Position numbers and translations under genes: made by a program
Shown: positions 20,903 through 43,429 of the stretch, piece after piece
Position numbering within the stretch: the first letter of the stretch is position 1
How the letters are laid out: every line of letters starts with the position of its first letter
Notes under the pieces: model-generated
What the model was told of the DNA's origin: nothing
Database searches by the model: none
The model's input: the letters and a program-made list of their open reading frames with translations, nothing else
IMG/VR virus record: IMGVR_UViG_3300049215_000771
Span: 310,001 to 374,000 of that record
Reading direction: 5' to 3' (one strand)
DNA: 64,000 nucleotides

Positions 20903-23470
20903 ATGCCTATTTGGAGTGACTTCTTCAAGTTGTTCACTTATGCCGGCGAGAAAGACCCGCTGGCTAAGAAGAAGGATACACGAAACCTACAAGGTGCCGG
21001 TATCGGTCAACCTGACGTGTATCCAACGCTTGGCGGTGAAGGCCAGGCGGGTGGTGCTGGTGGGGGCCAGGGTCAAGCCCAGCTTCGCCAGTCCTATGAC
21101 ATGATCGACACCACGACTTTGACAAACCGCTCCATGCGGTACAAAGAGTACGAGCGTCTTCGCAACGTCCCGGAAATCGAAATGACCATGACGGTACTGG
21201 CCGATGAAGCCTGTGTAGCAGGCAGTACCCCGATTGCCACACCATTCGGTTTCCAAACCATCGAATCATTGGCTGCCAAGTACAAACCGGAAGAACGCTT
21301 CCTTTGTTACTGCTGGGACAGCCACACTCAAGATTACACGTTAGGCTGGGCCTATCACCCACGCCTAGTCAAAAGAGCGCCAACCGTCACAGTTATACTG
21401 GACGACGGCCACACTTTCACTGTGACCCACGACCACCGCATCATGCGGAAGAATGGTGCCTGGGTTCAGGCTGGCGAGATAGTACGAGGCGATGAATTGA
21501 AGCCTTTCTACCGCCTGCCCGCCAGTTACCGACACACCAAGCAAAAAGCCAAACAATTCCCACGCATCTTCTCCACCAACAAAGGCTGGATCACTGAACG
21601 CCAGTTGTTGGAAGAATGGAAAACCGGCAAGGAAGACCCAAAGCTGGAGAAGGTCAATCGGGCGATGCGCATGATCTGCGGCGGCTTGAACGTCCGTCAG
21701 ATTGCCAGATTGATGGAATATGACTGGCAAACCATTGAGAATTGGCTTCGGGCCGAGGGCTTCTCCCATCGAGAAGTCAAGATTCTATCGAAGCATCGTG
21801 AGTCTCGCCGGGTAGTCGGCGTTCACGAAAGCCCTGAGATGGACGTTTACGATATGTCCGTCGAAGAACACAAGTGTTTTGCCACAGATTGTGTCATCAT
21901 GCACAACTGCCAGAAAGATGAAGAAGGCAACGTATTCAAGGTAATTTGCAGCAGTGCCGCCGCCAAGAAAGAAGTTGAGTTCCTGTTGCGTCATCGGAAC
22001 ATGCTCAACCTGAATCGTTTGTCATGGACCTGGTTCAAGAACTTGTGCATCATGGGCGATTTCTTTGTAGAAACCGTCATCAACCCGGACAGCCCCAAGG
22101 AAGGCATCTACAAGGCCGTGCCACTCCCACCGGAGAGCATGTACCGGATCGAAACAACCAAGGGCAAGCTGATTGAGTTCCAGCAGTCTAAGGAAGGCCC
22201 GGACTACCAGGCTATCGTGCGTGCGCCGATGGTTTCTCAGGCGGGCGAGGCCGAATTGAACCAAAGCATGGCAATTCGCTTTGCCAACAACCAGATCGTA
22301 CACTTCAGGATTGGTGACGACCGCAAAACTTTCTACCCATACGGACAATCCCTCATCGAGCCGGCTCGTAGCCCCGCCCATCAACTGAGGTTGATGGAAG
22401 ATGCTATGGTCGTGTATCGACTTACCCGTGCCCCTGAACGTAGGGTGTTCTATGTGGACGTTGGACAGTTACCTCCGTTCAAGGCTGAAGCCTTCATTGA
22501 AAGGTTGAAGGATCAGTTCAGGAAGCGTAAGATAGCACAGAATAGGGGAGTTCCTGGGGCCAACCAAGTTGAAGAAAGGTGGCAGCCACCCGCCCAGGAC
22601 GAAGATTACTGGTTGCCTATTAGACCGCAAAGCCAGACAAGGATTGAAACGCTTCCGGGTGCGCAGAACCTTGGAGAGATCGACGATGCGATTTACTTCA
22701 GGAACAAGTTGTTTACGGCATTGAACTTCCCAAAAAATTACTTCGCCAACGAAGACCCTGGTGCGACTAGAATTACATTGTCGGCTCAGGATGTGAAGTT
22801 TGCCCGTATGGTGGAGAGGCTTCAAAGCCACTTCGAGGACGGACTGTTGGAATTGGCCGAGAGGCATCTTCAGTTGCGTGGCTACCCGGAGGAAGCCTAC
22901 GAGGATTTGAAGATCAAGATGACCCCACCTTCCGACTGGAGGGAGTTGTCCAGGGCTGAAGTCGTCAACGGACGTTATGGCAATGCGACCACACTCAAGT
23001 CTGGTCAGTTGATGGCTGATTGGGACATCATGGTGAAGATTCTCAAGTTCACGGAAGACGAAGCTGAGGAGATGTTGAGCCGCTTGAAGATTCAGAAGTT
23101 GGAAGACCTGAAGCTACAGGTACTCGCTCAGAACCCACAGTTGTTGGGTATCGGTATTCCTGGACAAGACCCGCAACCCGGACAGGAACTTGGTTCCGAG
23201 CCGGGCGGTCCAAGTCCGAATCCGTCGCCCGATGGCGGCGGTCAGCAGCCGCCTCCCGATCAGGGGGCACCGCCTGCTGCTCCTGGCGGGGACCAACCGC
23301 CTCCAGGTGGCGATCAAGGACCGGCTCCCGCTGGCGCATCGCCTGCTGAGGGAAGTCCGCTACCGGAAGTCGAGCCTGAAGATGTCAAGAAGTTCGATCT
23401 TGAGATTCAGGACTACGAGACAGAGCAGGACGAGGAAGACATCGACCACAGCATAGGTGAAGACAAGTGA
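20903..23470 (+). CDS. gp20: Portal protein (T4 gp20-like), intein-containing, Pro/Gly-rich C-terminal extension
   Basis: RYKEYERL, YGQSLIEPAR, EDAMVVYRLTRAPERRVFYVDVG, EDYWLP, IETLPGAQNL. Confidence 0.93.
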   Translation: MPIWSDFFKLFTYAGEKDPLAKKKDTRNLQGAGIGQPDVYPTLGGEGQAGGAGGGQGQAQLRQSYDMIDTTTLTNRSMRYKEYERLRNVPEIEMTMTVLADEACVAGSTPIATPFGFQTIESLAAKYKPEERFLCYCWDSHTQDYTLGWAYHPRLVKRAPTVTVILDDGHTFTVTHDHRIMRKNGAWVQAGEIVRGDELKPFYRLPASYRHTKQKAKQFPRIFSTNKGWITERQLLEEWKTGKEDPKLEKVNRAMRMICGGLNVRQIARLMEYDWQTIENWLRAEGFSHREVKILSKHRESRRVVGVHESPEMDVYDMSVEEHKCFATDCVIMHNCQKDEEGNVFKVICSSAAAKKEVEFLLRHRNMLNLNRLSWTWFKNLCIMGDFFVETVINPDSPKEGIYKAVPLPPESMYRIETTKGKLIEFQQSKEGPDYQAIVRAPMVSQAGEAELNQSMAIRFANNQIVHFRIGDDRKTFYPYGQSLIEPARSPAHQLRLMEDAMVVYRLTRAPERRVFYVDVGQLPPFKAEAFIERLKDQFRKRKIAQNRGVPGANQVEERWQPPAQDEDYWLPIRPQSQTRIETLPGAQNLGEIDDAIYFRNKLFTALNFPKNYFANEDPGATRITLSAQDVKFARMVERLQSHFEDGLLELAERHLQLRGYPEEAYEDLKIKMTPPSDWRELSRAEVVNGRYGNATTLKSGQLMADWDIMVKILKFTEDEAEEMLSRLKIQKLEDLKLQVLAQNPQLLGIGIPGQDPQPGQELGSEPGGPSPNPSPDGGGQQPPPDQGAPPAAPGGDQPPPGGDQGPAPAGASPAEGSPLPEVEPEDVKKFDLEIQDYETEQDEEDIDHSIGEDK
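21212..21907 (+). mobile_element. Intein (232 aa) in portal, with internal HTH and no recognisable endonuclease
   Basis: A|CVAGST block A; VTHDHRIM block B; VYDMSV block F; IMHN|C terminus. Confidence 0.88.
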
Positions 23471-25083: not shown

Positions 25084-25257
25084 AATCCCTCGCTGTTTTT
25101 GCATCTCACTGCATACCTATGTAGTGAGGGACACTGAATTTGAAGGCCCAACCCCGAAGAATTAAAGGGGTCGTTAATATATACCTCTATATGCGGGGGC
25201 ATCCGAGTTGTTGGAATGATTCGGAGAACAACACACAGCACTAGGGAGTCGCAAACT

Positions 25258-27207
25258 ATGAAAAGAAAACTCATCAGCTTCGATGTCTTCAAGAAGATCG
25301 AGGAAGGCTCAATTTCCACCGCCCAGCACGAGTTGGCCGGTGCGGAAGAAGTGTTGTCCAAGACCTTGGGCGTCGATGAACTGAGGCTGCACTGCTTTGG
25401 AGAATCGGATGTAACTTACCAGAGCTTGGACGGCAGCTTCGTTCATGCAAATTACAAGATCAACAAGAACCAGCTTGTACTTGAGAACATCGAGTCGTTG
25501 GTCATTGAGGAAGAAACCGAGAAGAAGAAAGCTCGTGACGTACTCACCAGCATGGTGGAATCCCTGCTGGACAACAACGAAGCTAAGGCATCCGAACAAT
25601 TCGAGAATTACCTTTCTTTGCCCGTCGTTCGCCGGGATTTGATCGTTTCTGAAGCCTTTGATGTTTCAGTATCCAAACCATCTGGCAAACATTCTTCCCT
25701 GTACGGCAAGAAACAAGATCGTGGCCTAGTTGCCAAGCGTATCCGTGAGATGAAGAAGACCAAGAAGAAGCTAACTGCTGCTCCAAGTCTTCGTGCATCC
25801 GTCGCCAAGAAACGTGCCAACGCCGCCAAGAAGCTCGGCGGGGCCAACAATCCACGGTGGCGCACTTACGCCCGCAAGGTGAAGCCGACAACCATGAAGG
25901 AATGGTCGGTGATGTGCGAACACATCATGGACTACCTGGATTACAAAGAATTCGGCCCAACCATCAAGGAATCCCTCGTTCAGAACGATGAGAAGGGTAA
26001 TGTCGTAGCGGTCGCCATGCCGACTATCCAGAAGCGTAACGAAGGCAAGATTTTGTCCTTCAACTGGAAGACTTTGGATCACGAAGTAAAAACCCAGCGA
26101 GCCAAGATCAAGCGGCTTGCCGAGGACACGAACTTCTGCAAGGCGATGGCCGATCTGAAGCGTTACAACAACATTTCCGACAATACAGCACTTGAAGAAA
26201 CGCTGGAGAAGATTGTCTCCATGTGGCCTGATGTTTTGTATCTGACTCAGACCGAGTTGGCAGAACAGATCGGCGCTGCTTTGGAAACTGCGGCTGTCAA
26301 GAATTACGACGACCAGACCTGTGAGTTCATGGCGGAAGGCATCTTGAGGATGGCTCACCACGCCTACACGGATCGGGTTCGCAAGATTTCCAGCATGGCT
26401 GGCGTTTCCCCGGAAGCAACTACCGAAAGCACTGAGGAGAAGGACGCTTACGCCAACTTCGCCAAGGTGTGTGCCGACTTCTACCCACAGTTGGACGAGT
26501 CGGATCAGGCCGAGTTGAGGGTTTTTGCTGATCTCTACAAGGCTTTGCACGAAGTCTTCCGCATTGCATCTGAAACTGGCGATGAAGCTACTCGTAGTGA
26601 GGTTGCCAGCTACTTGAACAATTGCGAAGCGATCTTGAACCGTGAAAGCCAGCCAGATTTGAGTCTGGCCGAAACAATTGCCAATTATTTGTACGACCTG
26701 GCGGAAGCCAATGTGGAAGGGGCCAAGGACACTTGGGACGTTTCCAACAGTGACGTTCACACCACGGTCAGCGGCGATCACCCACGCATGTCTTGGGCTG
26801 CGAAGGTAACAAATGCTGTTCCTTCCAACTTCCCAGGCGATTGGGGCGGCAAGGCTCCAGTTTCGGACGGCAAGAGCTACCGCAATGGCCTCGAAGACGA
26901 AATGAGGAGCCGTTCGTGGAGCCAGTACGCCAGCGGTGAAACTTACCCGGATTTGAAGAACCCATATGTTCCGAAGTCTCCGTGGGATGTTGGCAATTAC
27001 AAGATGAAGGGTGAGGAAAGCGCTGCAACCGCTGGAACAAGCGATTGGAGCCGTTGGCAGTCGAAAGATACCTGGCCAAACCTCCAGAATCCATACGTTC
27101 CTGACTCGCCTTGGGATAAGAGCAAGTACAAGGCCACCATCGACAAGGGCAACCTGGTTGTGGACAAGGGCGAGACGAAGCAGGGCAGCGTAAAAAACCA
27201 CTTCTAA
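25258..27207 (+). CDS. Putative prohead core/internal head protein with C-terminal PxLxNPYVP repeats
   Basis: Position between portal and protease (T4 gp67/68 locus); helical and charged; GGGAG RBS. Confidence 0.6.
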   Translation: MKRKLISFDVFKKIEEGSISTAQHELAGAEEVLSKTLGVDELRLHCFGESDVTYQSLDGSFVHANYKINKNQLVLENIESLVIEEETEKKKARDVLTSMVESLLDNNEAKASEQFENYLSLPVVRRDLIVSEAFDVSVSKPSGKHSSLYGKKQDRGLVAKRIREMKKTKKKLTAAPSLRASVAKKRANAAKKLGGANNPRWRTYARKVKPTTMKEWSVMCEHIMDYLDYKEFGPTIKESLVQNDEKGNVVAVAMPTIQKRNEGKILSFNWKTLDHEVKTQRAKIKRLAEDTNFCKAMADLKRYNNISDNTALEETLEKIVSMWPDVLYLTQTELAEQIGAALETAAVKNYDDQTCEFMAEGILRMAHHAYTDRVRKISSMAGVSPEATTESTEEKDAYANFAKVCADFYPQLDESDQAELRVFADLYKALHEVFRIASETGDEATRSEVASYLNNCEAILNRESQPDLSLAETIANYLYDLAEANVEGAKDTWDVSNSDVHTTVSGDHPRMSWAAKVTNAVPSNFPGDWGGKAPVSDGKSYRNGLEDEMRSRSWSQYASGETYPDLKNPYVPKSPWDVGNYKMKGEESAATAGTSDWSRWQSKDTWPNLQNPYVPDSPWDKSKYKATIDKGNLVVDKGETKQGSVKNHF

Positions 27208-28842: not shown

Positions 28843-30279
28843 ATGAACGCAAATTCCAAATTCCTGAACGAAGCTAGAGAGTTGGAAGGTCGTTGGGGCA
28901 AGACTGGCCTCTTGGAAGGCATTGAAGATCGCTACATCCGATCCGCCACCGCCGTTCTGCTTGAAAACCAGCGCCTCATGAACGAAGTTTCGACCGACAC
29001 TGGCGACATCGCTCAGTTCAAGCGTATCAGCATCCCGTTGGTACGTCGTATTTACCCGCAGCTAATTGCTAACAAGATTGTATCTGTTCAGCCATTGCTC
29101 GGCCCAACAGGTTTGGTGTACTACCTGCGCTTCCGGTACTCGTCCAACAAGGGCGCTACTCGTGGAGCGGACAACAACGGCGGCTTCCCGGCTGACGATG
29201 TGAACACCCTCATGCAGTTGGCTGATGGTACTGCCAACTTGGACATTTTCTACACGCACCAGTTCGTGCAGAACGAGTCCACCAGCACCGACAACGGTGG
29301 CAACGTCACTTCGGCGTACAGCCCGTTGGAACACACCCCGATCCTGGCCGGCACCATCACGGGCACGATCTATGACGGCTCCCTCGCAGTGCAGACCTTC
29401 GTGGTTTCCTCGACCGGAACCTTCACCTTCTCCAACATCGGTAGCCCAGCTACCTACGTCACCGCTGGTTCTTTGAACCTGACGACTGGCGAGTTGGTGT
29501 TGACTTGGAACTCGGCCCCAGGCCCGAACCACGCTGTACTTTCCTACGAGTACAACATGGAATGTCAACAAGATTTGCCGGAAATCAACTTGGTCATTGA
29601 GTCGGAAGAAATTGCCGCCAAGACCCGCAAGTTGAAGGCTGTATGGTCCTACGAAGCGCAGCAGGACTTGCGCTCGCAGCACAACCTCGACGCCGAGGCT
29701 GAGTTGACGGCTGTATTGGCCCAGGAAATCAACCTCGAAATCGACCGTGAAGTGTTGACGGACCTCCGTAACAACAGCGGTACGGTAGCGGCATGGGATT
29801 TCAACACGGCATTGGGCGAAACCATCAAGGAGAAGTATGAGTCGCTGTATGTGAAGGTTGTTGAAATCAGCAACGTCATCCACAGGAAGACTCTTCGTGG
29901 TGGTGCAAACTGGATGGTAACTTCCCCTGAAGTTGCTTCCATCTTCGAGACGGCAACCGCTGGTTTCGCACCGGCTCCATCTGAGACGTTCACTTCGTCG
30001 CTGGGTATCCAGTACGTCGGAACCGTCAACAACAGGTGGCGGTTGTACAAAGACCCGTTGTTCCCATCGAACCAGATTCTCATGGGGTACAAGGGTGATT
30101 CTTACATGGATTCGGGTTACTTCTATTGCCCCTACGTCCCGCTCACGCAGACGCCTGTGGTTTTGGACCCTGAGTCCTTCTGTCCGAGGAAGGGTATCCT
30201 TACACGTTACGGGAAGAAACTGTTGCGTGAAGGGGCCAAGTTCTACGCCAGGATGTCCATCGCCAACTTCGTCATCTAA
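28843..30279 (+). CDS. gp23: Major capsid protein (T4 gp23-like)
   Basis: LLENQ, IPLVRR, VQPLLGPTGLVYYLR, RKLKAVWS.E..QDL, LDAEAEL, YCPYVPL, GILTRYG. Confidence 0.97.
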   Translation: MNANSKFLNEARELEGRWGKTGLLEGIEDRYIRSATAVLLENQRLMNEVSTDTGDIAQFKRISIPLVRRIYPQLIANKIVSVQPLLGPTGLVYYLRFRYSSNKGATRGADNNGGFPADDVNTLMQLADGTANLDIFYTHQFVQNESTSTDNGGNVTSAYSPLEHTPILAGTITGTIYDGSLAVQTFVVSSTGTFTFSNIGSPATYVTAGSLNLTTGELVLTWNSAPGPNHAVLSYEYNMECQQDLPEINLVIESEEIAAKTRKLKAVWSYEAQQDLRSQHNLDAEAELTAVLAQEINLEIDREVLTDLRNNSGTVAAWDFNTALGETIKEKYESLYVKVVEISNVIHRKTLRGGANWMVTSPEVASIFETATAGFAPAPSETFTSSLGIQYVGTVNNRWRLYKDPLFPSNQILMGYKGDSYMDSGYFYCPYVPLTQTPVVLDPESFCPRKGILTRYGKKLLREGAKFYARMSIANFVI

Positions 30280-31237: not shown

Positions 31238-31260
31238 GCTTAATGATATGTCAATAAGCA

Positions 31261-31320: not shown

Positions 31321-31323
31321 GAC

Positions 31324-31358
31324 AAAGGCCAGGCATTTCTGCCTGGCCTTTTTCTTTT
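31324..31358 (+). terminator. Terminator after repeat copy 2
   Basis: aaaggccaggca-tttc-tgcctggccttt + T tract. Confidence 0.8.
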
Positions 31359-31381
31359 GTGTCAAGTGCATACAATTCGAT

Positions 31382-34904: not shown

Positions 34905-35423
34905 ATGAAATTCGATCTGTACAAGAAAAAGTACCGCTGGAAGTTCTCAGCGGACTTCCCTGGGGCAACTCTGGCCGAGCAATTCGTCAAAATCGACGAG
35001 CGCCCGACCCTTCACATCGTTGAAAAAGAAAACAGCGACGGCAGTTTCCGCATTGAGAAACAGTCCTGGGCACCACTCGTCACGACGTTCTACGATCCAG
35101 GCACAACTGGACCCCAGGAACTCAAATGCGATTTGACGGGGCTATACACACTTCTGGCCGGGTTCTACGACTTCGGCGCATGTCTTTTCAAAACGGACGA
35201 CCCTTCCGAAAAGCTGGAAGAAATCAAAGACAGGCTCGGAACTGGTAAAATCACCATGTACGACGGCGAGACGCCCATTGAAATTTGGGAACTCCGTGGC
35301 TTGTGGCCGCACTCCGTCAACTTCGGCGATTTGTGCTATTCCAGCAGCGACGAGACGGAAATCGAGATTACCTGGCGATTCAAGGAGTGCAGCTACCACA
35401 ATCTGCTAACCCCAGCTAAATAG
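34905..35423 (+). CDS. Tail tube protein paralog (T4 gp19-like)
   Basis: KKYRW, RP, W.PL..TFYD, E.WELRGLWP.SVNFGDLCYSS. Confidence 0.75.
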   Translation: MKFDLYKKKYRWKFSADFPGATLAEQFVKIDERPTLHIVEKENSDGSFRIEKQSWAPLVTTFYDPGTTGPQELKCDLTGLYTLLAGFYDFGACLFKTDDPSEKLEEIKDRLGTGKITMYDGETPIEIWELRGLWPHSVNFGDLCYSSSDETEIEITWRFKECSYHNLLTPAK

Positions 35424-35427
35424 GGGT

Positions 35428-36462: not shown

Positions 36463-37012
36463 AATGCTTTTCGGCTTTCTTGATGACTTCCTTGGCGACG
36501 GCTTTGGGGTCTTTCTCCTCAGCGCCGATGCCAAGGATTCGCATTTTGTTGGTGATTTCAACACTGTGAACATCTAGGTTGTCGATCAGCAACCACTTCC
36601 TGCCAGCCAGGTGATACTTCTCAGCAAGTTCGCCTGGCTTTGTTTCTTTGGCGCTGTGCATTCCCTTGACGTATTTCGACCAGCCCAACACTTCAACGAC
36701 TTTCTCAACGTAGTCGATGCGGCTGTGGCTCAAGATGATGAAATCGGCGAACTTGGAAATGGCTTTGACGAGGTTGGTCGCTCCGGGTCGTGGAAACAAG
36801 TACATATCCTGATCTTCGGCATGGATCAGGCGCACATCCGGGTAGGGCTTCTTGTTTGGAACGATCATTTTGGCAAATTCTTTGTTCTGTGGATGGTCCT
36901 TCAGCCAGCCAATTTCCATATTGTGAACGAGGGTTTCGTCCAGATCGGAGAACACGGCGGGGCGTCCACTTTCATTTTGTTCAAGCCAAAGGCCAAATTG
37001 CATGAGGTTCAT
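36338..37012 (-). CDS. HAD-superfamily NIF/FCP1-like phosphatase
   Basis: SDLDETL (DxDxT), RPGA..L, LLIDN. Confidence 0.8.
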   Translation of the reverse strand: MNLMQFGLWLEQNESGRPAVFSDLDETLVHNMEIGWLKDHPQNKEFAKMIVPNKKPYPDVRLIHAEDQDMYLFPRPGATNLVKAISKFADFIILSHSRIDYVEKVVEVLGWSKYVKGMHSAKETKPGELAEKYHLAGRKWLLIDNLDVHSVEITNKMRILGIGAEEKDPKAVAKEVIKKAEKHFIDVCDWVPTVHEYDDYELWRVLPKVKEMLGLDWTKGDPYF

Positions 37013-37047
37013 CGCAAGGTATTTATCGCTGCACCGTATATATTTGC

Positions 37048-37809
37048 ATGGTGAGTCTCGATGGTTTCACAGAGTATGTCTTCAACGAGAGCGTTGAAGT
37101 AATTGATGCAAAGAAGCAAGTCCGTGATATTCTCAAGCAAAAGCGGGCCACAAACAGGAAAGGTCTTCTTATTTGTTTCGAGGGTATCGACGGAGTAGGC
37201 AAAACTACGCAGGTTGACAAATTGATGGATTACCTGGACGGTAAGGGATACGAAGTCATCCACACCAAATGGAACTCTTCCCCCTTGCTCAAAAAACCCA
37301 TCAAGAAAGCCAAAGAAAAACATATGCTCACGCCGATCTTGTACTCGCTGCTGCACGCTGCCGACATGGTGGTGAGGTACGAGAACGAGATCGTGCCGGC
37401 CTTGAACGCCAACAAGATCGTAGTTTCCGATAGATATATCTATACATCTATGGCTCGTGACTCGGCGAGGGGCGTTGACACGGGCATCTTAGAGAAAATA
37501 TACGCCGATATTCGCCAGCCGGATATTTTGTTCCATTGCGTATTGCCCATCCATCGAGCCTTCCATCGCCTCGTCAAAGAAAAAGACCTGACCTACTACG
37601 GCGTCGGCATGGATTTGAACCTTGCGGACAACATGGAAGACAGCTACATTAAATACGAGAACCTGGTAGACAAGGCTTACCGGCGCATCCTGCCGAAAGT
37701 CACCAGCTACGTCAAACTCGACATGGGCAAAAGCATTGAAGAAATTGCCCTGGAAGTCGAGCGTGTTGTCAAAGAAAAAACAGGCATCGGCAAGTACAAG
37801 AAGGATTGA
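37048..37809 (+). CDS. tmk: Thymidylate kinase
   Basis: FEGIDGVGKTTQ, SDRYIYTS.A, PDILF. Confidence 0.9.
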   Translation: MVSLDGFTEYVFNESVEVIDAKKQVRDILKQKRATNRKGLLICFEGIDGVGKTTQVDKLMDYLDGKGYEVIHTKWNSSPLLKKPIKKAKEKHMLTPILYSLLHAADMVVRYENEIVPALNANKIVVSDRYIYTSMARDSARGVDTGILEKIYADIRQPDILFHCVLPIHRAFHRLVKEKDLTYYGVGMDLNLADNMEDSYIKYENLVDKAYRRILPKVTSYVKLDMGKSIEEIALEVERVVKEKTGIGKYKKD

Positions 37810-37812
37810 AAT

Positions 37813-38118
37813 ATGACTGTGTACGTCGATCCACTTAGAGAGGTTGATCCCAGGCCCGGCTGGAAGTGGAATACAGCCTGCCACCTGATTGCAGACTCAC
37901 TTGACGAGTTACATGCCTTTGCTGCCCGCCTGGGCTTGCGGAGGGCATGGTTCCAACCACATCGCATATTTGACCACTACGATCTTCACTTGCGGAAGCG
38001 AAAACTGGCTGTTAAGCTGGGAGCAGTGGAGGTTGATATGACTTGGCTCAAAAATCGCATCAGGGCCAAACAAAATGAGCGAGCCAAAGTTTCAGGTAGG
38101 TCAACAGTTGATTGTTAG
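37813..38118 (+). CDS. DUF4031 family protein
   Basis: MTVYVD, CHLIADS.DELHAFAARLGLRRAWFQ, HYDL. Confidence 0.85.
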   Translation: MTVYVDPLREVDPRPGWKWNTACHLIADSLDELHAFAARLGLRRAWFQPHRIFDHYDLHLRKRKLAVKLGAVEVDMTWLKNRIRAKQNERAKVSGRSTVDC

Positions 38119-38362
38119 ACACGGCAGCGGAAGTTTTCTGCACGTTGTCGTTAAGAAGGTCATCAAATCTGCGAAAAAATACTGGTACGAGTTTGTAGAA
38201 ACAGAAGAACAGTTTCCGATGTTTTTGTCGGAAACTGTTCTGTTGAAGATTTTACATCCTGTTCTCGGTCAGGTCGTGGTCGATACTATCCTCATTCCGG
38301 CTGCGGAAGTAGGCACGAAGATCATCTCTCAACTTGATATTATGATCGGTCAAAGCCCATAG
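38075..38362 (+). CDS. Hypothetical KOW/SH3-like protein
   Basis: PKFQVGQ.L.V; 3' end overlaps the convergent gene. Confidence 0.45.
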   Translation: MSEPKFQVGQQLIVRHGSGSFLHVVVKKVIKSAKKYWYEFVETEEQFPMFLSETVLLKILHPVLGQVVVDTILIPAAEVGTKIISQLDIMIGQSP

Positions 38363-39232
38363 ACCCTGCCAATCTTTCTTGAGATCGAGCAGTGGGTGGT
38401 ACTTGTTGTCAATAAGAATCTGCCATCGTTCCTTGTACTTTCTGTCACGTTTCTTTCCATGCCAGTGATGTAACACAGTCCCAGGCATATATCCCACATT
38501 CCTGTGGATATGGGTTTCGGCCCGCTCCTGCCATCGCATCAACTCTCCCATGTACGCCGGGTCCAGCTTGTCGCCGGGCAACGATTGTTCGATCTTGCCG
38601 ATCAATCCGAAAGCCATATGACGGTCGGCAGCGCCCAAGATGGCAATGTCGATCAAACCGCCCAGGTGGTCGATGGCTTCACGACGGGCTGCCCAGGCAA
38701 AACCAGGGTGCCAATTGGAGTAACACTTCGTCGGTGGAAAACCGTGCAAATAGCTGTAGACAAAACCACGGTGACGCTGGAAGGTTTCGTGATTGGGGCA
38801 CAAGTCTTGCGCCGTCGAGAACATCTGGATAACATGGTAATGCTGAAGCTGGTTCAGTGTTTCACGCACCCAATCATGGCGGGCGAAAGAAATATCGGCG
38901 TCAATCCAGGCGACGTACTCCCAATCGGAAGGCAAGCGAGAAATAGCGACGTTAATCATGTTTTCTTTGTGCCAGATTTCCGAACGGGTGCGCAGTTGGA
39001 TGTGCCGAGGGTTATTGGCTTCAGTTACAGCGAACGGGCGATGCCCGAAAGCCACTTCGACAGTGTAGAGTTCTGCGCCGGCATCACTACACATCTTGGC
39101 GAAGTCTTCGTACAACTTGTAGCGAGTACGATAACGACAAGGGTTTGTAATAGGCGCAATCACATACAACTTAGCATTGTCCGGGTGCAACCTATTGGAC
39201 AGCGGGTGAGTAACGTGCATCGAATGGCTCAT
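38252..39232 (-). CDS. GT-A-fold glycosyltransferase-like protein (paralog of 23724-24653)
   Basis: WHKENMIN, AWIDAD, PGFAWAARR, HHWHG; AAGGAG RBS before ATG 39232. Confidence 0.65.
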   Translation of the reverse strand: MSHSMHVTHPLSNRLHPDNAKLYVIAPITNPCRYRTRYKLYEDFAKMCSDAGAELYTVEVAFGHRPFAVTEANNPRHIQLRTRSEIWHKENMINVAISRLPSDWEYVAWIDADISFARHDWVRETLNQLQHYHVIQMFSTAQDLCPNHETFQRHRGFVYSYLHGFPPTKCYSNWHPGFAWAARREAIDHLGGLIDIAILGAADRHMAFGLIGKIEQSLPGDKLDPAYMGELMRWQERAETHIHRNVGYMPGTVLHHWHGKKRDRKYKERWQILIDNKYHPLLDLKKDWQGLWALTDHNIKLRDDLRAYFRSRNEDSIDHDLTENRM

Positions 39233-39333
39233 GGGAGACAACTCCTTTTGTTGTAGAATTCAACCTATCTAGTCTTTCCGTTCCCCTTTCTTTTTAGACC
39301 TTTGTACCTGCCGTCCATTGAAAGGAGAATGCG

Positions 39334-39915
39334 ATGGTAATAACCGACAAGTTTGAAATTGATGGGAAGGAAGTTACAGGTCATTTCAGCCTGGAATATC
39401 TGCAAGATGCAGAAATCCAAATGCGGCTTTTGGGAAAATTCCGCACCACCGAGATCACGGATGAGGAAATCGCCATCTGGAAGGCTATATCCTTCGGCAT
39501 TGACCGCACACCGAGCGGCGAATTGGATCAATCACCCGAAGCTGTAACCTGGCGTGAGCTATTGGGATGCGACGGGCCGGGGTTCCGTTGCCCCATTTTG
39601 ACCGGCGAGATCACCCAGCAAGAGATCAACGAGTGGGGCGTCGAGTACGAAAAACTGAAAAAGATAGATTTCGAGGCCGTGAAAAAGAAGTATAATGTAA
39701 AGTTCGAGTCCGACCACGAGCCGCCGTACCCGGAGTACGATACTTCCACGCCTGGAGATTGCTGGCCTCCGTTTCAGCCTACTGCGCCGATTCAATGGCC
39801 TGCCGAGTCAACGATTTTCCCGTGGGTGGAAGACACAAGGCCGAAGGCAAACAACATCCTGGACTCGTTCCTGAACTTTTTCTCGAATCCAGATACCTAT
39901 GGACCTCGTAGTTGA
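39334..39915 (+). CDS. Hypothetical protein
   Basis: AAGGAG RBS, 193 aa. Confidence 0.6.
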   Translation: MVITDKFEIDGKEVTGHFSLEYLQDAEIQMRLLGKFRTTEITDEEIAIWKAISFGIDRTPSGELDQSPEAVTWRELLGCDGPGFRCPILTGEITQQEINEWGVEYEKLKKIDFEAVKKKYNVKFESDHEPPYPEYDTSTPGDCWPPFQPTAPIQWPAESTIFPWVEDTRPKANNILDSFLNFFSNPDTYGPRS

Positions 39916-40774
39916 AACCGACGTAGGACATGACCCCGATGACCTGTTTGCTCTCTGTTACCTCGTTGCTGCTGGGGTCAATGTCCGAACCATCCTGATC
40001 TCTCCTGGTGATCCCGACCAAATCGCCATAGCCCGGTACTTCTGTGATCGGGTTGGGTTGAAAATACCAATCGGGGTCGCCCAGGAGGGCAGGATGAAAC
40101 TCTCTTCCGGCTCGATTCACCATGAACTGCTCAAGCGAGCCAACCTGCCACTGGAAGCCAAGGCTGATGGCCTGGGAGTAGACATTCTCCAAGATGTGTT
40201 CAAGAACTATCCAGACTCCGAACTTTTCATCATTGGTCCCGTGACCAGCATCGGCACTTACCTTGGCAAAACTGGTCGCAAGGTGAAGCGGGCAACGATG
40301 CAGGGCGGATTTCTCTCCTATCGCTACCACGCCCCGATGAAACGAGAGCCGAAGTTTGAGGACAAAACCTGGATGCCGACCTTCAACCTCAACGGGGATC
40401 GCAAGGCTGGCGTGAAATTTCTGGAGGCCGACATCGAAGAACGTCGGATGGTCGGCAAAAACGTCTGCCACACGGTTGTTTTTAACCAGGAACGATACGA
40501 ACAAATCGAGGTACAACGAACGAACGTCAACGGTGCCGCCGCCATGCTGTTCGACTACGCTGCTGGTTTGTATCTTGACAAACATGAAGGCAAGAAATTC
40601 CACGATCCGACTGCCGCCTGTCTCCACCTGCACCCGGAGATCGGGACATGGGTAAGGGGTAGAACAGTGAAGATGGAATCGGGCTGGGGAACTGAACTCG
40701 ATCCCGATGGAGATTACATCTGCGCCGACGTGGATCACGACAAATTGTGGCGATACATTCTGAACCAGAAATAG
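39899..40774 (+). CDS. Inosine/uridine-preferring nucleoside hydrolase family
   Basis: ETDVGHDPDD, GPVTSI, MQGG, FN...D, FHDP. Confidence 0.85.
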   Translation: MDLVVETDVGHDPDDLFALCYLVAAGVNVRTILISPGDPDQIAIARYFCDRVGLKIPIGVAQEGRMKLSSGSIHHELLKRANLPLEAKADGLGVDILQDVFKNYPDSELFIIGPVTSIGTYLGKTGRKVKRATMQGGFLSYRYHAPMKREPKFEDKTWMPTFNLNGDRKAGVKFLEADIEERRMVGKNVCHTVVFNQERYEQIEVQRTNVNGAAAMLFDYAAGLYLDKHEGKKFHDPTAACLHLHPEIGTWVRGRTVKMESGWGTELDPDGDYICADVDHDKLWRYILNQK

Positions 40775-40840
40775 TAGATACCACCATGACAAACTTCAGG
40801 AGTGGCTTCCGTTAGGTTCCCCAACCTAACAGGAGGCCAC

Positions 40841-41020
40841 ATGAGCCACAGACGAATCAGACTCCCACGAGTCGCCCAGGAGAAACGAAACAACCAAGAA
40901 GGCTGGAATCGAGCCAGCCGCAGCCCCATCCATCTTCCTGACCATTGGTCTGAGGAACAGTGGGTTCGGGATCAGCGAAGCTGGAAGAAGTTTCGCAAGA
41001 CACAATACAAGCCGAAATGA
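40841..41020 (+). CDS. Small basic protein
   Basis: AGGAGG RBS; ...RSWKKFRKTQYK; small hairpin 40811-40830 just upstream. Confidence 0.6.
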   Translation: MSHRRIRLPRVAQEKRNNQEGWNRASRSPIHLPDHWSEEQWVRDQRSWKKFRKTQYKPK

Positions 41021-41022
41021 TG

Positions 41023-41060
41023 AACCGAGCCGCACTAGATAGGTGCGGCTCGGTTTTTTT
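41023..41060 (+). terminator. Terminator hairpin whose loop is TAGATAG
   Basis: aaccgagccgcac-tagatag-gtgcggctcggtt + T run. Confidence 0.85.
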
Positions 41061-41096
41061 GTTGATCGAACTTACAATTCATCAGGAGGAAACATC

Positions 41097-41372
41097 ATGT
41101 CATACGAATCAATGGCTAATTTCTTGGTCCACAAGATAAAGCGTGTAAGTGTGTCGGAAAGCGCTGACCCGAACAAGTGGCCGACAAACAACTCGTGGGG
41201 CAACACACCGAGCGGCGGCTGGCCCCGGTTGGACAATCCCTACGTCCCCAAGCAGAACAACAACTCAAGCTGGAAGGCTTCGGACACGGGGATCGTGACC
41301 GAGGAAGAAATGCAGAAGAAGCAGGCCACAAAGAAGTACAGGAGCATTGACGACCCGTGGGAAGAATCATGA
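41097..41372 (+). CDS. Mini-protein: core-protein repeat fragment + YRSIDDPWE tail
   Basis: AGGAGG RBS; SW...SG.WPRLDNPYVPK matches the repeat in 25258-27207. Confidence 0.75.
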   Translation: MSYESMANFLVHKIKRVSVSESADPNKWPTNNSWGNTPSGGWPRLDNPYVPKQNNNSSWKASDTGIVTEEEMQKKQATKKYRSIDDPWEES

Positions 41373-41617
41373 AAAACCCGCTCGGTCGGCCCAATCAAAT
41401 CTTGATGGCCTACCGTGGCGATTCGATGATGGACGCAGGCTATTTTTACGCACCCTACATCCCCCTTCAGTCTACACCAGTGGTAGGAATTCCGCCGCCC
41501 GCTGTTCCATCGGTTCCATCGCCAGAAGAAGAAAACGACACGGTGATCCCGGAGTGGGCAAGGAAAACAGTCTACCGTTCCATCGACGATCCCTGGGAAA
41601 CTTCCACTCCTGACTGA
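41369..41617 (+). CDS. Mini-protein: MCP C-terminal fragment + YRSIDDPWE tail
   Basis: ATGA coupling; 26/38 aa identical to MCP residues 403-440. Confidence 0.8.
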   Translation: MKNPLGRPNQILMAYRGDSMMDAGYFYAPYIPLQSTPVVGIPPPAVPSVPSPEEENDTVIPEWARKTVYRSIDDPWETSTPD

Positions 41618-41700
41618 AAATTTCCCTTGACGCAACTCCTATGCCGACAAGCAGTTCTTCCACCGACATCTCGTCTGGTTGTACAATCCGAGAAAACTAC

Positions 41701-41730
41701 TTGACAACTGGCCTTGACCCGTAGTAGTAT
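41701..41730 (+). promoter_or_regulatory. Sigma70-like early promoter
   Basis: TTGACA-N18-TAGTAT upstream of 41805. Confidence 0.55.
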
Positions 41731-41804
41731 AGCTCTCAGACAAGACGCAGCCGACTGTCGGCGGCGGCAACAAACGAGTTGATCCTTATTGTGAAGGGGA
41801 AACG

Positions 41805-42500
41805 ATGAGCGACAAGAACAAGGGTGGGAAGCCGGCAGCGGACGTTCAGCCCGTGGCGGCGCAACAGGTGAATCAGACGGCTCAGGTCGAGGAGGAGGCG
41901 GTCCCGGACGAACGTGACCAGGCCGAACTCGCAGCGGCACGGGAGGCGGACGCTCAGGCGCAGGCACAACCGGCCCAGCCGGAACCGGAGCCGGAAGCCC
42001 CGGAAGCCCCGGAAGCCCCGGAAGTTCTGGCGATTCGTCAGGCGTTCGCCGCCTTCGAGGATCGCATCACGGCCTACGAACGGGAGAACGAACAGAAGCG
42101 TGCCGAGATCGAGGCGAACGAGGAAAAGATCAACGAGCTTCGCTCGACGCTCCGCACCAAGTTCGGTGGCTTGTTCGGTCAGTCGGCATCACCAGTCCGT
42201 TCGGCCCCGACCAAGAAGCAGGCCAGCAACGGCAGCGCCAAGAAGTCGGTCAGCAAGCCCGCCGCCAGCAACGGCAACGGCAGCCGCACCCGGACGAACT
42301 ACGGCGACGGCAACAGCACGGGCGACCTGATCGCCGCCTGTCTGAAGAAGGCGAAGAAGCCGGTCAACTCCGAGCAGTTGACGGCGTACCTGAAGCAGCA
42401 CGGCAACACCACCAACCCGTCCGTGGAACTGTCCCGGATGGTCGCCAAGGGACTCGTGGTCCGGCCCAGCCGGGGCTTCTACGAGTGGGCGGGCGAGTAA
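41805..42500 (+). CDS. Putative nucleoid-associated/DNA-binding protein (disordered - coiled coil - winged HTH)
   Basis: C-terminal DLI...LKKAKKP.N...L...L...NPSVELSRMV.KGLVVR..RGFY. Confidence 0.65.
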   Translation: MSDKNKGGKPAADVQPVAAQQVNQTAQVEEEAVPDERDQAELAAAREADAQAQAQPAQPEPEPEAPEAPEAPEVLAIRQAFAAFEDRITAYERENEQKRAEIEANEEKINELRSTLRTKFGGLFGQSASPVRSAPTKKQASNGSAKKSVSKPAASNGNGSRTRTNYGDGNSTGDLIAACLKKAKKPVNSEQLTAYLKQHGNTTNPSVELSRMVAKGLVVRPSRGFYEWAGE

Positions 42501-42579: not shown

Positions 42580-42822
42580 ATGAAGACATTTCTCGAATGG
42601 CTGAAATTACGAGAAGAAGGCGGCTTGTTCGGCAACCCAGGCACACCCTATCCCGATGGCTTGACGCCCACCACTTCTAAGAAACTTGGCCCCAACAAAG
42701 GCAAACTCGACAATTCCGGCATGAGCGGCGGTCCTGGTCGCAAAAGTGCTGGTGGAATGCCTGCGGCTGGTGGTGCGCCCATTCCTCCCGCTGGTGGAAA
42801 TACCCCTGCACCACCTAAATAG
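42580..42822 (+). CDS. Small Gly/Pro-rich protein with MKTFLEWLKLREE leader
   Basis: Leader motif. Confidence 0.7.
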   Translation: MKTFLEWLKLREEGGLFGNPGTPYPDGLTPTTSKKLGPNKGKLDNSGMSGGPGRKSAGGMPAAGGAPIPPAGGNTPAPPK

Positions 42823-42826
42823 GGGT

Positions 42827-43429
42827 ATGATTAGTTTCAGGACATGGCTTGAAGAACATGATGATTTTGAGGCAGAAGCCGGACCCCACATCAAAGTGCT
42901 GCTGCCGAGCGTTAAACAAAGCAGCAACTACGACTGCGGTGCTGCTGCGCTTCGTGCCATAGCGGAATACTTCAAAGTCGGCCCTGAGAAGGAAGCCGAC
43001 TTCATCAAGGCTTGTAAAACCACCAAGAAGGACGGCACCGACCCGGATGGCATCATCAGGGCGGCTCATGCCTTCGGCCTCAACACCAGGGCCAAGGCGG
43101 GGATGTCCATTGAGGAATTGAAATCCTTCCTAGACATGGGCAGGCCCATCATGTGTCTGATTCAAGCCTACGGCGAGCCAGACGAGTACCACAAGCCACA
43201 AAGCGGGCACTACGTCAATGCCATCGGTTACGACGGCAATCACATCTATTTTGAAGACCCGTCAATGAAAGGCAACCGTGGGATGTTGCCTTTCAAGGAA
43301 TTCAAGAAACGCTGGCATGACAAAGGCGAGGGAGGCAAAAGCTACACCCGCTGGGGCGTCGTCATCTGGAAGCAGTCCGACGAAGGAACTGATCGAGAAT
43401 ACGTTCCCCAGGCGAAGAAGATTCCATGA
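42827..43429 (+). CDS. C39-like cysteine peptidase with MISFRTWLEE leader
   Basis: VKQ...DCGAAAL, GRPI, GHYV..IGYD...Y..DP. Confidence 0.85.
   Translation: MISFRTWLEEHDDFEAEAGPHIKVLLPSVKQSSNYDCGAAALRAIAEYFKVGPEKEADFIKACKTTKKDGTDPDGIIRAAHAFGLNTRAKAGMSIEELKSFLDMGRPIMCLIQAYGEPDEYHKPQSGHYVNAIGYDGNHIYFEDPSMKGNRGMLPFKEFKKRWHDKGEGGKSYTRWGVVIWKQSDEGTDREYVPQAKKIP

What the first reader, a model, noticed from the sequence alone, without database searches (positions are those of the whole stretch)
41097..41617. Two mini-genes fuse head-protein fragments to one shared C-terminal tag (YRSIDDPWE)
Seen: ORF 41369-41617 starts KNPLGRPNQILMAYRGDSMMDAGYFYAPYIPLQSTPVV, 26/38 identical to the phage's own MCP residues 403-440 (nt 30049-30162). 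ORF 41097-41372 contains SWGNTPSGGWPRLDNPYVPK, matching the repeat SWSQYASGETYPDLKNPYVPK of the 25258-27207 head-module protein. Both end in the same 9-mer, YRSIDDPWE, yet 5 of 9 codons differ synonymously (AGG/CGT, AGC/TCC, ATT/ATC, GAC/GAT, CCG/CCC). The MCP fragment is also diverged at many synonymous positions. The pair has a strong RBS, ATGA coupling and a late-promoter-like motif upstream. Inference: selection acts on the peptides, giving a modular 'virion epitope + docking tag' design rather than decayed duplication. Candidate roles: decoys for host sensors of capsid proteins (capsid sensing is established for CapRel and Lit), adaptors/degrons that route head proteins or their binders to a protease, or assembly modulators directed at competing phages.
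Basis: partly seen in the sequence, partly recalled or inferred. Interest (0 to 1): 0.92.

Follow-up and report, generated by a model that had tools for sequence, protein, structure and literature searches.

The report
Tagged mimic mini-proteins of huge phages
Two tiny overlapping genes in a 673-kb phage each join a short copy of a head-assembly protein segment to the same nine-residue tail; they belong to an undescribed family in which pieces of capsid, portal, DNA-binding and other phage proteins all carry that one invariant tag, which suggests a modular "mimic plus docking peptide" system whose partner is still unknown.

Summary
ORF A (41097-41372) carries the NPYVP repeat motif of the head-core protein. 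ORF B (41369-41617) carries residues 403-448 of the phage's own T4-type capsid protein. Both end in YRSIDDPWE, with 5 of 9 codons synonymously different.

The finding is larger than reported. The same phage holds at least 10 canonical and about 14 total tagged mini-ORFs outside the window. Five of them tile the conserved core of the capsid protein. Related phages tag fragments of portal, an SSB-like protein and a phrog_5931 protein, plus zinc-ribbon and membrane modules.

A tag profile found only 33 protein clusters among 1.84 billion, all 57-147 aa with the tag at the C-end. Arg uses 5 codons and Ser 4, spanning both codon families. dN/dS is 0.1-0.3. AlphaFold2 predicts A and B to be disordered. 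No paper, Pfam or PHROG entry describes the tag.

Best reading: expressed, selected, bifunctional peptides in which a copied segment mimics its parent and a universal docking tag binds one shared partner. They most likely act as trans-dominant mimics in viral or host conflict. The partner and the purpose remain unproven.

The parts
40841..41020 (+). small basic ORF (59 aa from ATG) directly upstream, conserved in synteny
   Evidence: Homologous ORF precedes the pair in L003, L013 and L002. No Pfam or PHROG hit. Any role in the system is unknown.
41022..41062 (+). intrinsic-terminator-like hairpin plus T tract that separates the pair from the upstream gene
   Evidence: 15-bp stem with 9 GC pairs. 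The hairpin is conserved, with compensating differences, in window, L002, L003, L004, L013 and L034.
41071..41079 (+). conserved CTTACAATT box (a -10-like TACAAT without a clear -35), putative promoter of the pair
   Evidence: Identical core in five loci although the flanks vary. The same box lies 5 nt before the ATG of the B-type gene in L034. TACAAT or TATAAT lies 6-7 nt before the ATG of the tagged ORFs in L010 and L018. Function is inferred.
41084..41089 (+). Shine-Dalgarno AGGAGG of ORF A
   Evidence: Read directly from the sequence.
41097..41372 (+). ORF A, 91 aa: head-core NPYVP-motif mimic plus tag
   Evidence: Orthologues occur in L002, L003, L004, L013 and as P0014, P0018, P0034. dN/dS is 0.18-0.31. 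AF2 mean pLDDT is 57, with one short helix at residues 69-77.
41193..41252 (+). A residues 33-52, a copy of the W...WP.L.NPYVPK repeat unit of the head-core protein
   Evidence: 12/21 identity to residues 567-587 of the 25216-27207 protein. NPYVP occurs only three times in the window. The motif is kept in the A family.
41337..41363 (+). tag YRSIDDPWE in A, preceded by KK
41369..41617 (+). ORF B, 82 aa: MCP beta-hairpin segment plus Pro-rich linker plus tag; start overlaps A's stop (ATGA)
   Evidence: Orthologues are P0002, P0003, P0015 and the B genes of L013, L019 and L034. dN/dS is 0.11-0.27. AF2 mean pLDDT is 61 with no regular secondary structure. PHROG 138 (major head protein) matches residues 9-40 only.
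41372..41509 (+). B residues 2-47, a copy of MCP residues 403-448
   Evidence: 28/46 identity, E 1e-16.
41573..41599 (+). tag YRSIDDPWE in B
28843..30279 (+). parent 1: T4 gp23-type major capsid protein; segment 30049-30186 is the source of B's module
   Evidence: Pfam PF07068, E 6.6e-86. Aligns to T4 gp23* 5VF3. Other tagged fragments of the same phage map to residues 55-102, 257-310, 316-368 and 436-463.
25216..27207 (+). parent 2: head-module protein between portal and prohead protease (likely true start 25258), with two C-terminal NPYVP repeats at 26914-26976 and 27052-27102
   Evidence: No family hit. Its position matches that of the T4 prohead-core genes (inference).
20903..23470 (+). 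portal protein (gp20 type, with an intein-like insert); 23084-23179 is the segment copied in tagged mini-proteins of related phages
   Evidence: Pfam PF07230, E 6.7e-75. P0026 matches 23084-23179 with E 4e-7. A similar segment is present in L036 6266-6577.

Best explanation
A and B are two members of a large family of expressed, intrinsically disordered mini-proteins, all built on one plan. Each has a short N-terminal module, very often a 30-55-residue segment copied from a conserved, self-assembling phage protein. Identified parents are the gp23 capsid protein, the gp20 portal, the head-core repeat, an OB-fold SSB-like protein and a phrog_5931 protein. The module is followed by a Lys/Arg-rich or Pro-rich spacer and then the almost invariant peptide YRSID[D/E]PWE plus a few variable residues.

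Proposed mechanism, in steps. (1) The copied segment acts as a trans-acting mimic: it competes with the same segment of the full-length protein for whatever normally packs against or binds it. For B this is the partner strands of the capsid A-domain sheet in unassembled or unfolded capsid protein. For A it is the site that binds the NPYVP repeats of the head-core protein. (2) The tag is a short linear docking motif for one shared partner, so everything the modules catch is handed to the same machine or place. (3) The genes are accessory, patchy between close relatives and turning over, so the likeliest use is conflict: interference with parent-type proteins of co-infecting relatives or satellites, or timed restraint of the phage's own proteins.

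The architecture, the selection, the disorder and the distribution are shown. Steps 1-3 are inferred, and the docking partner is unknown.
For: Architecture and family:
- The tag pattern gave 9 IMG/VR loci and 8 metagenome loci.
- Relaxing four positions added only one hit.
- A tag profile found 33 clusters among 1.84e9 representatives, all 57-147 aa with the tag at the C-end.
- No full-size protein carries the tag.

Same genome:
- L005 and L009 are 100% identical to window 34950-42396.
- That IMG/VR contig holds at least 8 further canonical tagged ORFs.

Tiling:
- Capsid-protein segments 55-102, 257-310, 316-368, 403-448 and 436-463 are each tagged.
- Two consecutive segments of phrog_5931 (profile positions 11-51 and 61-89) are tagged side by side in L015.
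- A portal C-terminal segment is tagged.
- An SSB-like segment matches its parent at E 7e-11.

Peptide-level selection:
- Arg uses 5 codons and Ser 4, from both codon families, in 27 copies.
- dN/dS is 0.11-0.31, with synonymous sites often saturated.
- R, S, I and D are invariant in the tag alignment.
- B keeps the residues that are conserved across gp23 proteins generally, and it is as close to other T4-type capsid proteins as to its own.

Disorder: AF2 mean pLDDT is 57-61, pTM is 0.15, and almost no secondary structure is predicted.

Expression signals: SD box, ATGA coupling, terminator, and a conserved -10-like box in six loci.

Accessory nature:
- The closest GenBank phage (capsid protein 81% identical) lacks the 316-368 fragment and lacks synteny.
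- L034 has B but no A.
- L036 (capsid protein 92% identical) has 8 tagged ORFs right after its head module, with mostly different modules.

Every parent that could be identified forms homo-oligomers or lattices. This rests on established knowledge for capsid, portal and SSB; T4 head assembly is summarised in PMC9546572.
Against: - No binding partner of the tag was found. Neighbours differ from locus to locus.
- No interaction was modelled or measured.
- About a third of the N-terminal modules have no identifiable parent, and several are zinc-ribbon-like or membrane segments. Mimicry of a parent therefore cannot be the whole story.
- A dominant-negative fragment would also poison the phage's own proteins unless timing or turnover prevents it. 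No self-protection mechanism is visible.
- Buried core strands such as B's can bind only unfolded or partly folded capsid protein.
- One B orthologue is broken.
- Expression is inferred from sequence signals only.
Confidence: 0.4

Rival explanations
1. Immune decoys. The copied segments are the parts of capsid, portal and SSB that host defence sensors recognise. The mini-proteins occupy those sensors, and the tag disables or removes the sensor.
For: Capsid protein, portal and SSB are the classic trigger classes of bacterial defence systems (general knowledge; capsid sensing in PMC9712102). One tile of the set (capsid residues 55-102: L025, P0017, P0027, P0029) aligns to T4 gp23 residues 85-137. 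That is the conserved N-terminal stretch in which, from my recollection of the residue numbers, the 29-residue Gol peptide lies. PMC3014915 says only that Gol is the most conserved gp23 region, lies in the first quarter of the protein, and binds EF-Tu to license the Lit protease. So a short linear capsid segment can be an immune ligand. The genes are accessory and turn over fast.
Against: The head-core repeat, the phrog_5931 protein, zinc ribbons and a membrane module are not known triggers. Most characterised sensors recognise folded proteins, whereas B copies buried core strands. Free Gol-like peptides activate Lit rather than block it, so a decoy needs an extra neutralising step for which there is no evidence. 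No defence-related partner was identified. The host is unknown, with only a co-binning hint to Acidobacteriota.
Confidence: 0.2
2. Address tag. YRSIDDPWE is a targeting peptide that delivers many small proteins to one place, most plausibly the prohead interior for injection into the next host. It would work like the capsid-targeting sequence of T4 internal proteins or the cargo-loading peptides of encapsulins. The N-terminal modules are the payloads.
For: The format matches those systems: diverse small proteins, clustered in hyperplastic regions, that share one short peptide. A flexible spacer plus a C-terminal peptide is exactly the encapsulin cargo layout, and the shell here has the HK97 fold. 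In L036 eight tagged ORFs lie directly downstream of protease-scaffold-capsid on the same strand. The -10-only boxes resemble late-type promoters.
Against: The phage already shows T4-like N-terminal targeting-type leaders (M..F.EWL..E, with L-x-E protease-type sites) on other proteins: the 80-aa ORF at 42580, the C39 peptidase, a Nudix enzyme and a DUF3293 protein. The tag contains no consistent L/I-x-E prohead-protease site. No enzyme-sized cargo carries the tag. This model does not explain why payloads should be tiled fragments of the capsid protein itself.
Confidence: 0.2
3. Pro-peptides. The tag and its Lys/Arg run are a recognition and cleavage handle for a phage protease, releasing the N-terminal peptides as the active species, as in RiPP or bacteriocin precursors or dibasic prohormone processing.
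For: Many precursors with one conserved recognition peptide and variable 'cores' is the RiPP pattern. A C39 peptidase gene lies 1.2 kb downstream in the window, L002 and L034. The window encodes seven peptidases, including S8 subtilase, M14 carboxypeptidase and two trypsin-like enzymes. The spacer is rich in Lys and Arg.
Against: There is no Gly-Gly site at the tag. The other tagged clusters have no C39 neighbour. Four of the peptidases carry signal peptides and are probably exported, while the mini-proteins have none. No modifying enzyme co-occurs.
Confidence: 0.07
4. Non-functional debris. Gene fragments left by duplications or mobile-element traffic happen to end in a common element-derived sequence.
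For: Partial duplication of capsid-gene DNA does occur here. A ~100-nt repeat of the gene's 3' end flanks a 1-kb insert next to a T5orf172 gene. Some copies are frameshifted.
Against: dN/dS is 0.1-0.3. The tag is conserved as a peptide across 5 Arg and 4 Ser codons and from AT-rich to GC-rich contigs. The ORFs have starts, SD boxes, translational coupling, terminators and conserved promoter-like boxes. The fragments are internal pieces with their own start codons. Thirty-three independent clusters always have the tag at the C-end.
Confidence: 0.03

Closest known systems
T4 internal proteins (IPI, IPII, IPIII, Alt) with the capsid-targeting sequence
   Same: Both are sets of otherwise unrelated small phage proteins, encoded in variable regions of a T4-type phage, that share one short peptide conserved at the protein level. 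That peptide acts as a common handle. T4 core composition is given in PMC9546572; the targeting sequence itself is from my own knowledge.
   Different: The T4 peptide is N-terminal, binds the scaffold core and is removed at an L/I-x-E site. Here the peptide is C-terminal, acidic and aromatic, and has no such site. This phage has separate T4-like N-terminal leaders on other proteins. T4 internal proteins are not fragments of capsid, portal or SSB.
Encapsulin cargo-loading peptides
   Same: Both have a short conserved C-terminal peptide behind a flexible linker, in a system with an HK97-fold shell.
   Different: Encapsulin cargo are folded enzymes, and their peptides are hydrophobic and Gly-rich. 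Here the 'cargo' are disordered 30-55-residue copies of viral proteins, and no enzyme carries the tag. Binding to the shell was not tested.
microProteins / dominant-negative truncated paralogues (e.g. Id and LITTLE ZIPPER proteins, the Tn5 inhibitor protein)
   Same: Both are small proteins evolved from a piece of a larger oligomerising parent, and both are expected to form non-productive complexes with it.
   Different: Known microProteins keep a whole interaction domain and have no universal tag. Here several parents are tiled into sub-domain pieces, and all share one docking peptide.
Gol peptide of T4 gp23 (Lit/EF-Tu exclusion system)
   Same: In both cases a short linear segment of a gp23-type capsid protein has a biological activity of its own (PMC3014915). 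One class of tagged fragments covers the equivalent conserved N-terminal region.
   Different: Gol is part of the full-length capsid protein and not a separate gene. It triggers host defence. B itself copies a different region (residues 403-448).
ssrA/tmRNA tags and other C-terminal degrons
   Same: Both give protein fragments that all end in one common C-terminal peptide.
   Different: ssrA tags are added during translation and end in hydrophobic residues at the extreme C-terminus. Here the tag is encoded in the genome and followed by 1-16 variable residues. No tmRNA is present in the window.

Membership tests
Gp23 major capsid protein family (PF07068 / PHROG 138) | Full HK97-type fold of about 400-520 residues matching the family profile end to end | tested here: not met
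   B matches PHROG 138 only at profile positions 357-387 of 444 and capsid residues 403-448. It is a fragment and not a capsid protein. AF2 predicts no fold.
T4-type capsid-targeting-sequence (internal protein) system | One short peptide shared by otherwise unrelated small phage proteins | tested here: met
T4-type capsid-targeting-sequence (internal protein) system | Peptide is N-terminal and ends in an L/I-x-E prohead-protease site | tested here: not met
   The tag is C-terminal in all but one copy. No conserved L/I-x-E is present. N-terminal M..F.EWL..E leaders occur on other proteins of the same phage.
T4-type capsid-targeting-sequence (internal protein) system | Proteins are incorporated into the prohead core or virion | not testable with these tools
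   Needs virion proteomics.
Encapsulin cargo-loading peptide | Conserved C-terminal peptide after a flexible linker | tested here: met
   Pro-rich or Lys-rich spacers precede the tag. AF2 predicts disorder.
Encapsulin cargo-loading peptide | Peptide binds the inner face of the HK97-fold shell; cargo are enzymes | tested here: inconclusive
   No enzyme-sized protein carries the tag among 1.84e9 representatives. Binding is not testable here.
microProtein / dominant-negative fragment | Small protein derived from part of a larger parent gene | tested here: met
   Capsid protein, portal, head-core repeat, phrog_5931 protein and SSB-like parents were identified.
microProtein / dominant-negative fragment | Forms non-productive complexes with the parent or its partners | not testable with these tools
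   No multimer modelling or binding assay is available.
tmRNA/ssrA-type tagging | Tag added from a tmRNA, ending in a hydrophobic degron at the extreme C-terminus | tested here: not met
   The tag is genome-encoded, acidic, and followed by variable tails. No tmRNA is in the window.
RiPP / double-glycine bacteriocin precursors | Gly-Gly (or similar) cleavage site next to the conserved recognition peptide, with a dedicated peptidase or modifying enzyme in the cluster | tested here: not met
   No GG lies at the tag. A C39 peptidase lies near the A/B locus only and not near the other clusters.

The most novel reading that the evidence does not exclude
Huge phages carry an evolvable library of bait peptides. 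New baits arise by copying 30-55-residue pieces of hallmark viral proteins (capsid, portal, SSB and others) and fusing them to one universal tag. The tag plugs every bait into a single effector or compartment. This would amount to a protein-level, modular targeting system, comparable to a natural PROTAC or an integrated decoy. It would be used in virus-virus or virus-host conflict and could be retargeted simply by swapping the copied fragment.
Probability: 0.25. Interest if true: 0.95.

Novelty: categorically new. Interest (0 to 1): 0.86.

Why it matters
If the model holds, it shows a principle not described for any virus. Short copies of the virus's own most conserved proteins would be systematically reused as trans-acting peptides, all coupled to one docking motif.

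- It would give a direct handle on an unknown hub protein of huge phages: pull down with a 12-16-residue peptide.
- It would explain a class of 'hypothetical' mini-ORFs in megaphage genomes.
- It would supply a natural catalogue of minimal peptides that engage T4-type capsid, portal and SSB assembly. Those peptides could serve as probes of head assembly and of the capsid-sensing defence systems of bacteria.
- The tag is a simple search key. A single degenerate DNA pattern finds such genes in metagenomes with almost no false positives.

Tried and rejected
- DNA-level repeat or mobile 'tag cassette'. Rejected because tag copies within one genome are only 67-93% identical in DNA and use Arg and Ser codons from both families.
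- tmRNA origin. No tRNA or tmRNA is in the window.
- T4 late promoter. TATAAATA occurs once in the window, and not at this locus. CTTACAATT with one mismatch is not enriched window-wide; its significance rests on conservation across loci.
- Homologues in GenBank phages. There are none for A, and only capsid proteins for B. The closest relative, LR756511, has no A or B within 20 kb of its capsid gene, no second copy of the 316-368 segment, and no synteny downstream of that gene.
- Literature. No paper contains the motif, and none describes tagged fragments.
- Cellular carriers of the tag. Only 3 loci were found in 185,579 species genomes, and all are phage-like contigs binned into Acidobacteriota MAGs.
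- Search for a recurrent neighbour as the partner. The following candidates occur near some loci only. None recurs at every locus.
  - C39 peptidase.
  - A 548-aa HELGH protein.
  - A DUF2201 metallopeptidase with an AAA protein.
  - A clan-CD-like lipoprotein present next to tagged genes in two phages, but apparently exported.
  - ClpS.
  - Sources.
- Parents of about ten N-terminal modules could not be found with Pfam, PHROGs or tblastn.
- Resemblances recalled from memory are leads only and are not used as evidence:
  - SSB C-terminal tip.
  - Clamp-binding tails.
  - Integrin I-D-S-P type MIDAS ligands.
  - The EF-Tu K-A-R-G-I-T cleavage site of Lit.
  - SBP peptide of GroEL.
Full report
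**1. What is at the coordinates.**

The window is part of a 673,178-bp contig. It carries a T4-type head module:
- a portal with an intein-like insert (20903-23470);
- a 663-aa protein without family hits (25216/25258-27207);
- an S77 prohead protease (27220-27906);
- a 299-aa scaffold-like protein (27906-28805);
- a gp23-type major capsid protein (28843-30279).

The capsid protein (MCP) is 81% identical to that of the 595-kb uncultured phage LR756511.

Eleven kilobases downstream lie ORF A (41097-41372, 91 aa) and ORF B (41369-41617, 82 aa), which overlap in ATGA.
- B residues 2-39 match MCP 403-440 at 26/38. BLASTP gives 28/46 with E 1e-16.
- The DNA of that stretch is only 60% identical, and 17 of the 26 identical residues use different codons.
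- A residues 33-52 match the NPYVP repeat of the 663-aa protein at 12/21.
- Both ORFs contain YRSIDDPWE, with five synonymously different codons.

The 9-mer occurs nowhere else in the window. A is preceded by a strong terminator hairpin, a CTTACAATT box and AGGAGG.

**2. The pair is conserved and under purifying selection.**

Protein searches found A and B homologues. Their contigs showed the same overlapping A-B pair in L003, L004 and L013, and in the 933-kb contig L002. A B-only version occurs at the syntenic site in L034.

The terminator, the CTTACAATT box and the SD box are conserved upstream in five loci (six including L034) although the flanking bases differ. In every homologue the copied segment and the tag are conserved, while the linker varies in sequence and length. 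Nei-Gojobori dN/dS is 0.18-0.31 for A and 0.11-0.27 for B, and synonymous sites are saturated in about half of the pairs.

One relative is damaged. In L002, B's ATG is ATA and a 1-nt deletion in the linker puts the still-intact tag out of frame. This is either a real decay event or a long-read assembly error.

**3. The tag defines a much larger family.**

A degenerate DNA pattern for YRSID[D/E]PWE hit nine IMG/VR loci. Two of them (L005, L009) are 100% identical to window 34950-42396. IMGVR_UViG_3300049215_000771 (532,729 bp) is therefore the same phage.

Elsewhere in that genome the pattern and two variants found further tagged mini-ORFs:
- a tandem, overlapping cluster of five in L007;
- single genes in L010, L012 and L025;
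- tagged genes plus truncated copies in L011 and L027.

In total the genome holds at least 10 canonical and about 14 tagged ORFs.

Relaxing four tag positions added a single hit in all of IMG/VR, so the motif is nearly invariant and chance matches are negligible. The metagenome scan added eight loci. The scan of 185,579 species genomes found only three loci, all phage-like contigs binned into Acidobacteriota MAGs.

A profile of 27 tags was searched against 1.84 billion representatives. It found 33 proteins at E<1e-3. All are 57-147 aa, and all have the tag within a few residues of the C-terminus.

A relative whose MCP is 92% identical (L036) has eight tagged ORFs in about 3 kb directly behind its protease-scaffold-MCP genes.

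Across 27 DNA copies, Arg is encoded by five codons (CGN and AGR) and Ser by four (TCN and AGC). This shows long-term selection on the peptide and not on the DNA.

**4. What is fused to the tag.**

Within the window's own phage, the tagged modules map to these MCP residues:

| MCP residues | Locus | Identity to own MCP |
|---|---|---|
| 55-102 | L025 | 87% |
| 257-310 | L010 | 59% |
| 316-368 | L007 | 77% |
| 403-448 | B | 61% |
| 436-463 | L007 | 64% |

Alignment to T4 gp23* and the T4 head structures (PMC9546572) allow these to be assigned, partly from general knowledge of the HK97 fold. They correspond to:
- the N-arm and first P-domain strand;
- the E-loop strand plus spine helix;
- the A-domain helices;
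- the A-domain beta-hairpin;
- the C-terminal strand.

So the conserved HK97 core is tiled and the variable insertion domain is skipped.

Other phages tag the same MCP pieces (P0015, P0017, P0027-29, P0032, P0035, P0009). They also tag:
- a portal C-terminal segment (P0026 against window 23084-23179, E 4e-7);
- the head-core motif (A family);
- a segment of a 351-aa OB-fold, zinc-finger protein that looks like a gp32-type SSB (E 7e-11 to the LR756511 protein, but Pfam gp32 only E 0.013);
- a phrog_5931 protein that by motif looks ParB-like.

For phrog_5931, one contig has most of the domain tagged (P0006). Another contig has two consecutive pieces, profile positions 11-51 and 61-89, each with its own tag, side by side.

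About a third of the modules have no identifiable parent. Several of those are zinc-ribbon-like, and one has a membrane helix.

AlphaFold2 with family alignments predicts both A and B to be essentially unstructured. Mean pLDDT is 57 and 61, pTM is 0.15-0.16, and the only regular element is a nine-residue helix before A's tag.

**5. How it most likely works.**

Shown:
- The genes are real, selected and modular.
- The tag is a peptide-level unit confined to mini-proteins.
- The N-terminal modules are often sub-domain copies of conserved phage proteins, and they keep the family-wide conserved residues.
- The products are disordered.
- The gene sets differ between close relatives.

Inferred: a disordered copy of a buried or interface segment can act only by binding what that segment normally binds. 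The invariant tag, separated by a flexible or Lys-rich spacer, has the properties of a short linear docking motif for one common partner.

I therefore favour bifunctional mimic-plus-dock peptides that act in trans on parent-type proteins (confidence about 0.4). Every identified parent is a self-assembling protein, which is the situation in which fragments are dominant-negative. The patchy, fast-changing distribution fits conflict genes better than core assembly factors.

The rivals are:
- Immune decoys (0.2). One tile covers the conserved N-terminal region aligned to T4 gp23 85-137. The Gol peptide that licenses the Lit protease is described as the most conserved region of gp23, within its first quarter (PMC3014915). 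Assigning Gol to this exact stretch rests on my memory of its residue numbers.
- An address tag for packaging (0.2). The format is that of T4 internal proteins and encapsulin cargo. However, this phage already has T4-like N-terminal leaders on other proteins, and no enzyme carries the tag.
- Protease-processed pro-peptides (0.07).
- Debris (0.03).

These estimates leave about 0.1 for explanations not considered here.

The partner of the tag was not found. No neighbour recurs at all loci.

**6. Comparison with known systems and novelty.**

The nearest analogues are the capsid-targeting sequence of T4 internal proteins, encapsulin cargo-loading peptides, microProteins, the Gol peptide and ssrA tags. 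Each shares one aspect and fails on others (see the membership table).

No paper in the library contains the motif, and none describes tagged tiling of viral proteins. Pfam and PHROGs have no model for A or for the tag. I rate it categorically new in architecture, with function open.

**7. Limits.**

- Expression, binding, localisation and the host are all unverified.
- The SSB and ParB labels rest on weak or motif-level evidence.
- Only fragments of the rest of the genome could be read.
- The promoter class is unknown.

Noticed in passing
window 42580-42822 and 42827-43429; L002 11523 and 11773; L010 9144; L012 2177 (-): Several proteins of this phage start with a shared N-terminal motif M..F.EWL..E: an 80-aa Gly/Pro-rich protein, the C39 peptidase, a DUF3293 protein and a Nudix hydrolase. 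The motif resembles the T4 capsid-targeting leader and contains L-x-E protease-type sites. These proteins may be packaged into the head.
   Followed up: partly
window 30249-30344 and 31261-31358: A direct repeat of about 100 nt (87% identical) duplicates the last codons of the capsid gene and its downstream sequence. It flanks a 313-aa minus-strand ORF (30434-31375) and lies next to a T5orf172-domain gene (31382-32044). It looks like a mobile-element insertion that copied part of the capsid gene.
   Followed up: partly
window 20903-23470: The portal gene is 855 aa. It has an intein-splicing-domain hit (E 3.9e-8, just below the Pfam cut-off) and HTH hits at residues ~157-335, ahead of the gp20 domain.
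   Followed up: no
window 2693-3649(-), 8776-9921, 19221-20309, 27220-27906, 42827-43429, 52450-53283(-), 62314-63285: There are seven peptidase genes in 64 kb: two trypsin-like, M28, M14 carboxypeptidase, S77, C39 and S8 subtilase. Four of them have signal-peptide-like N-termini.
   Followed up: partly
L007 1873-2958 (-), L024 4584-5498 (-), window 2693-3649 (-): A lipoprotein-like protein with a clan-CD (caspase-type) H-G ... S-C motif lies next to tagged mini-genes in two different huge phages (38% identical, E 1e-62). It has no Pfam or PDB sequence hit. It shares a C-terminal motif, PI[IV][DN]R..P...YP..Y[IV].[LI]P, with the window's trypsin-like protein, which may be a second shared C-terminal signal, this one on exported proteases.
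   Followed up: partly
L024 5975-6313: The 340-kb phage encodes a ClpS adaptor homologue (PF02617, E 3.4e-15) about 3 kb from a tagged gene.
   Followed up: partly
L002 (= CAVSYW010000005.1, 933,350 bp); L032 and L034 (JAYVUD01): Contigs of related huge phages are deposited inside MAGs labelled Acidobacteriaceae and Chloracidobacterium. This is either a host clue or mis-binning. The 933-kb length is remarkable for a phage-like contig.
   Followed up: no
L002 10269-10538: In the 933-kb relative, B has ATA in place of ATG and a 1-nt deletion in the linker, yet the out-of-frame tag is still intact with only synonymous changes.
   Followed up: partly
L010 3150-3175, L018 170-190, L034 ~3440-3460 (-), window 31371-31384: TATAAT or TACAAT boxes lie 5-7 nt before the ATG and no SD is present, which suggests leaderless transcripts for several genes of these phages.
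   Followed up: no
window 23724-24707 (-) and 38252-39241 (-): Two paralogous ~328-aa proteins of unknown function share an exact 9-mer. One sits inside the head module.
   Followed up: no
window 18256-18999, 1168-2124, 49405-50670, 53669-54934, 59370-61391: The window also encodes SIR2, a PD-(D/E)XK/Cas4-like nuclease, a class-III aminotransferase, glutamate dehydrogenase and a GT2/GT9 glycosyltransferase. These are auxiliary metabolic and possible conflict genes typical of huge phages.
   Followed up: no
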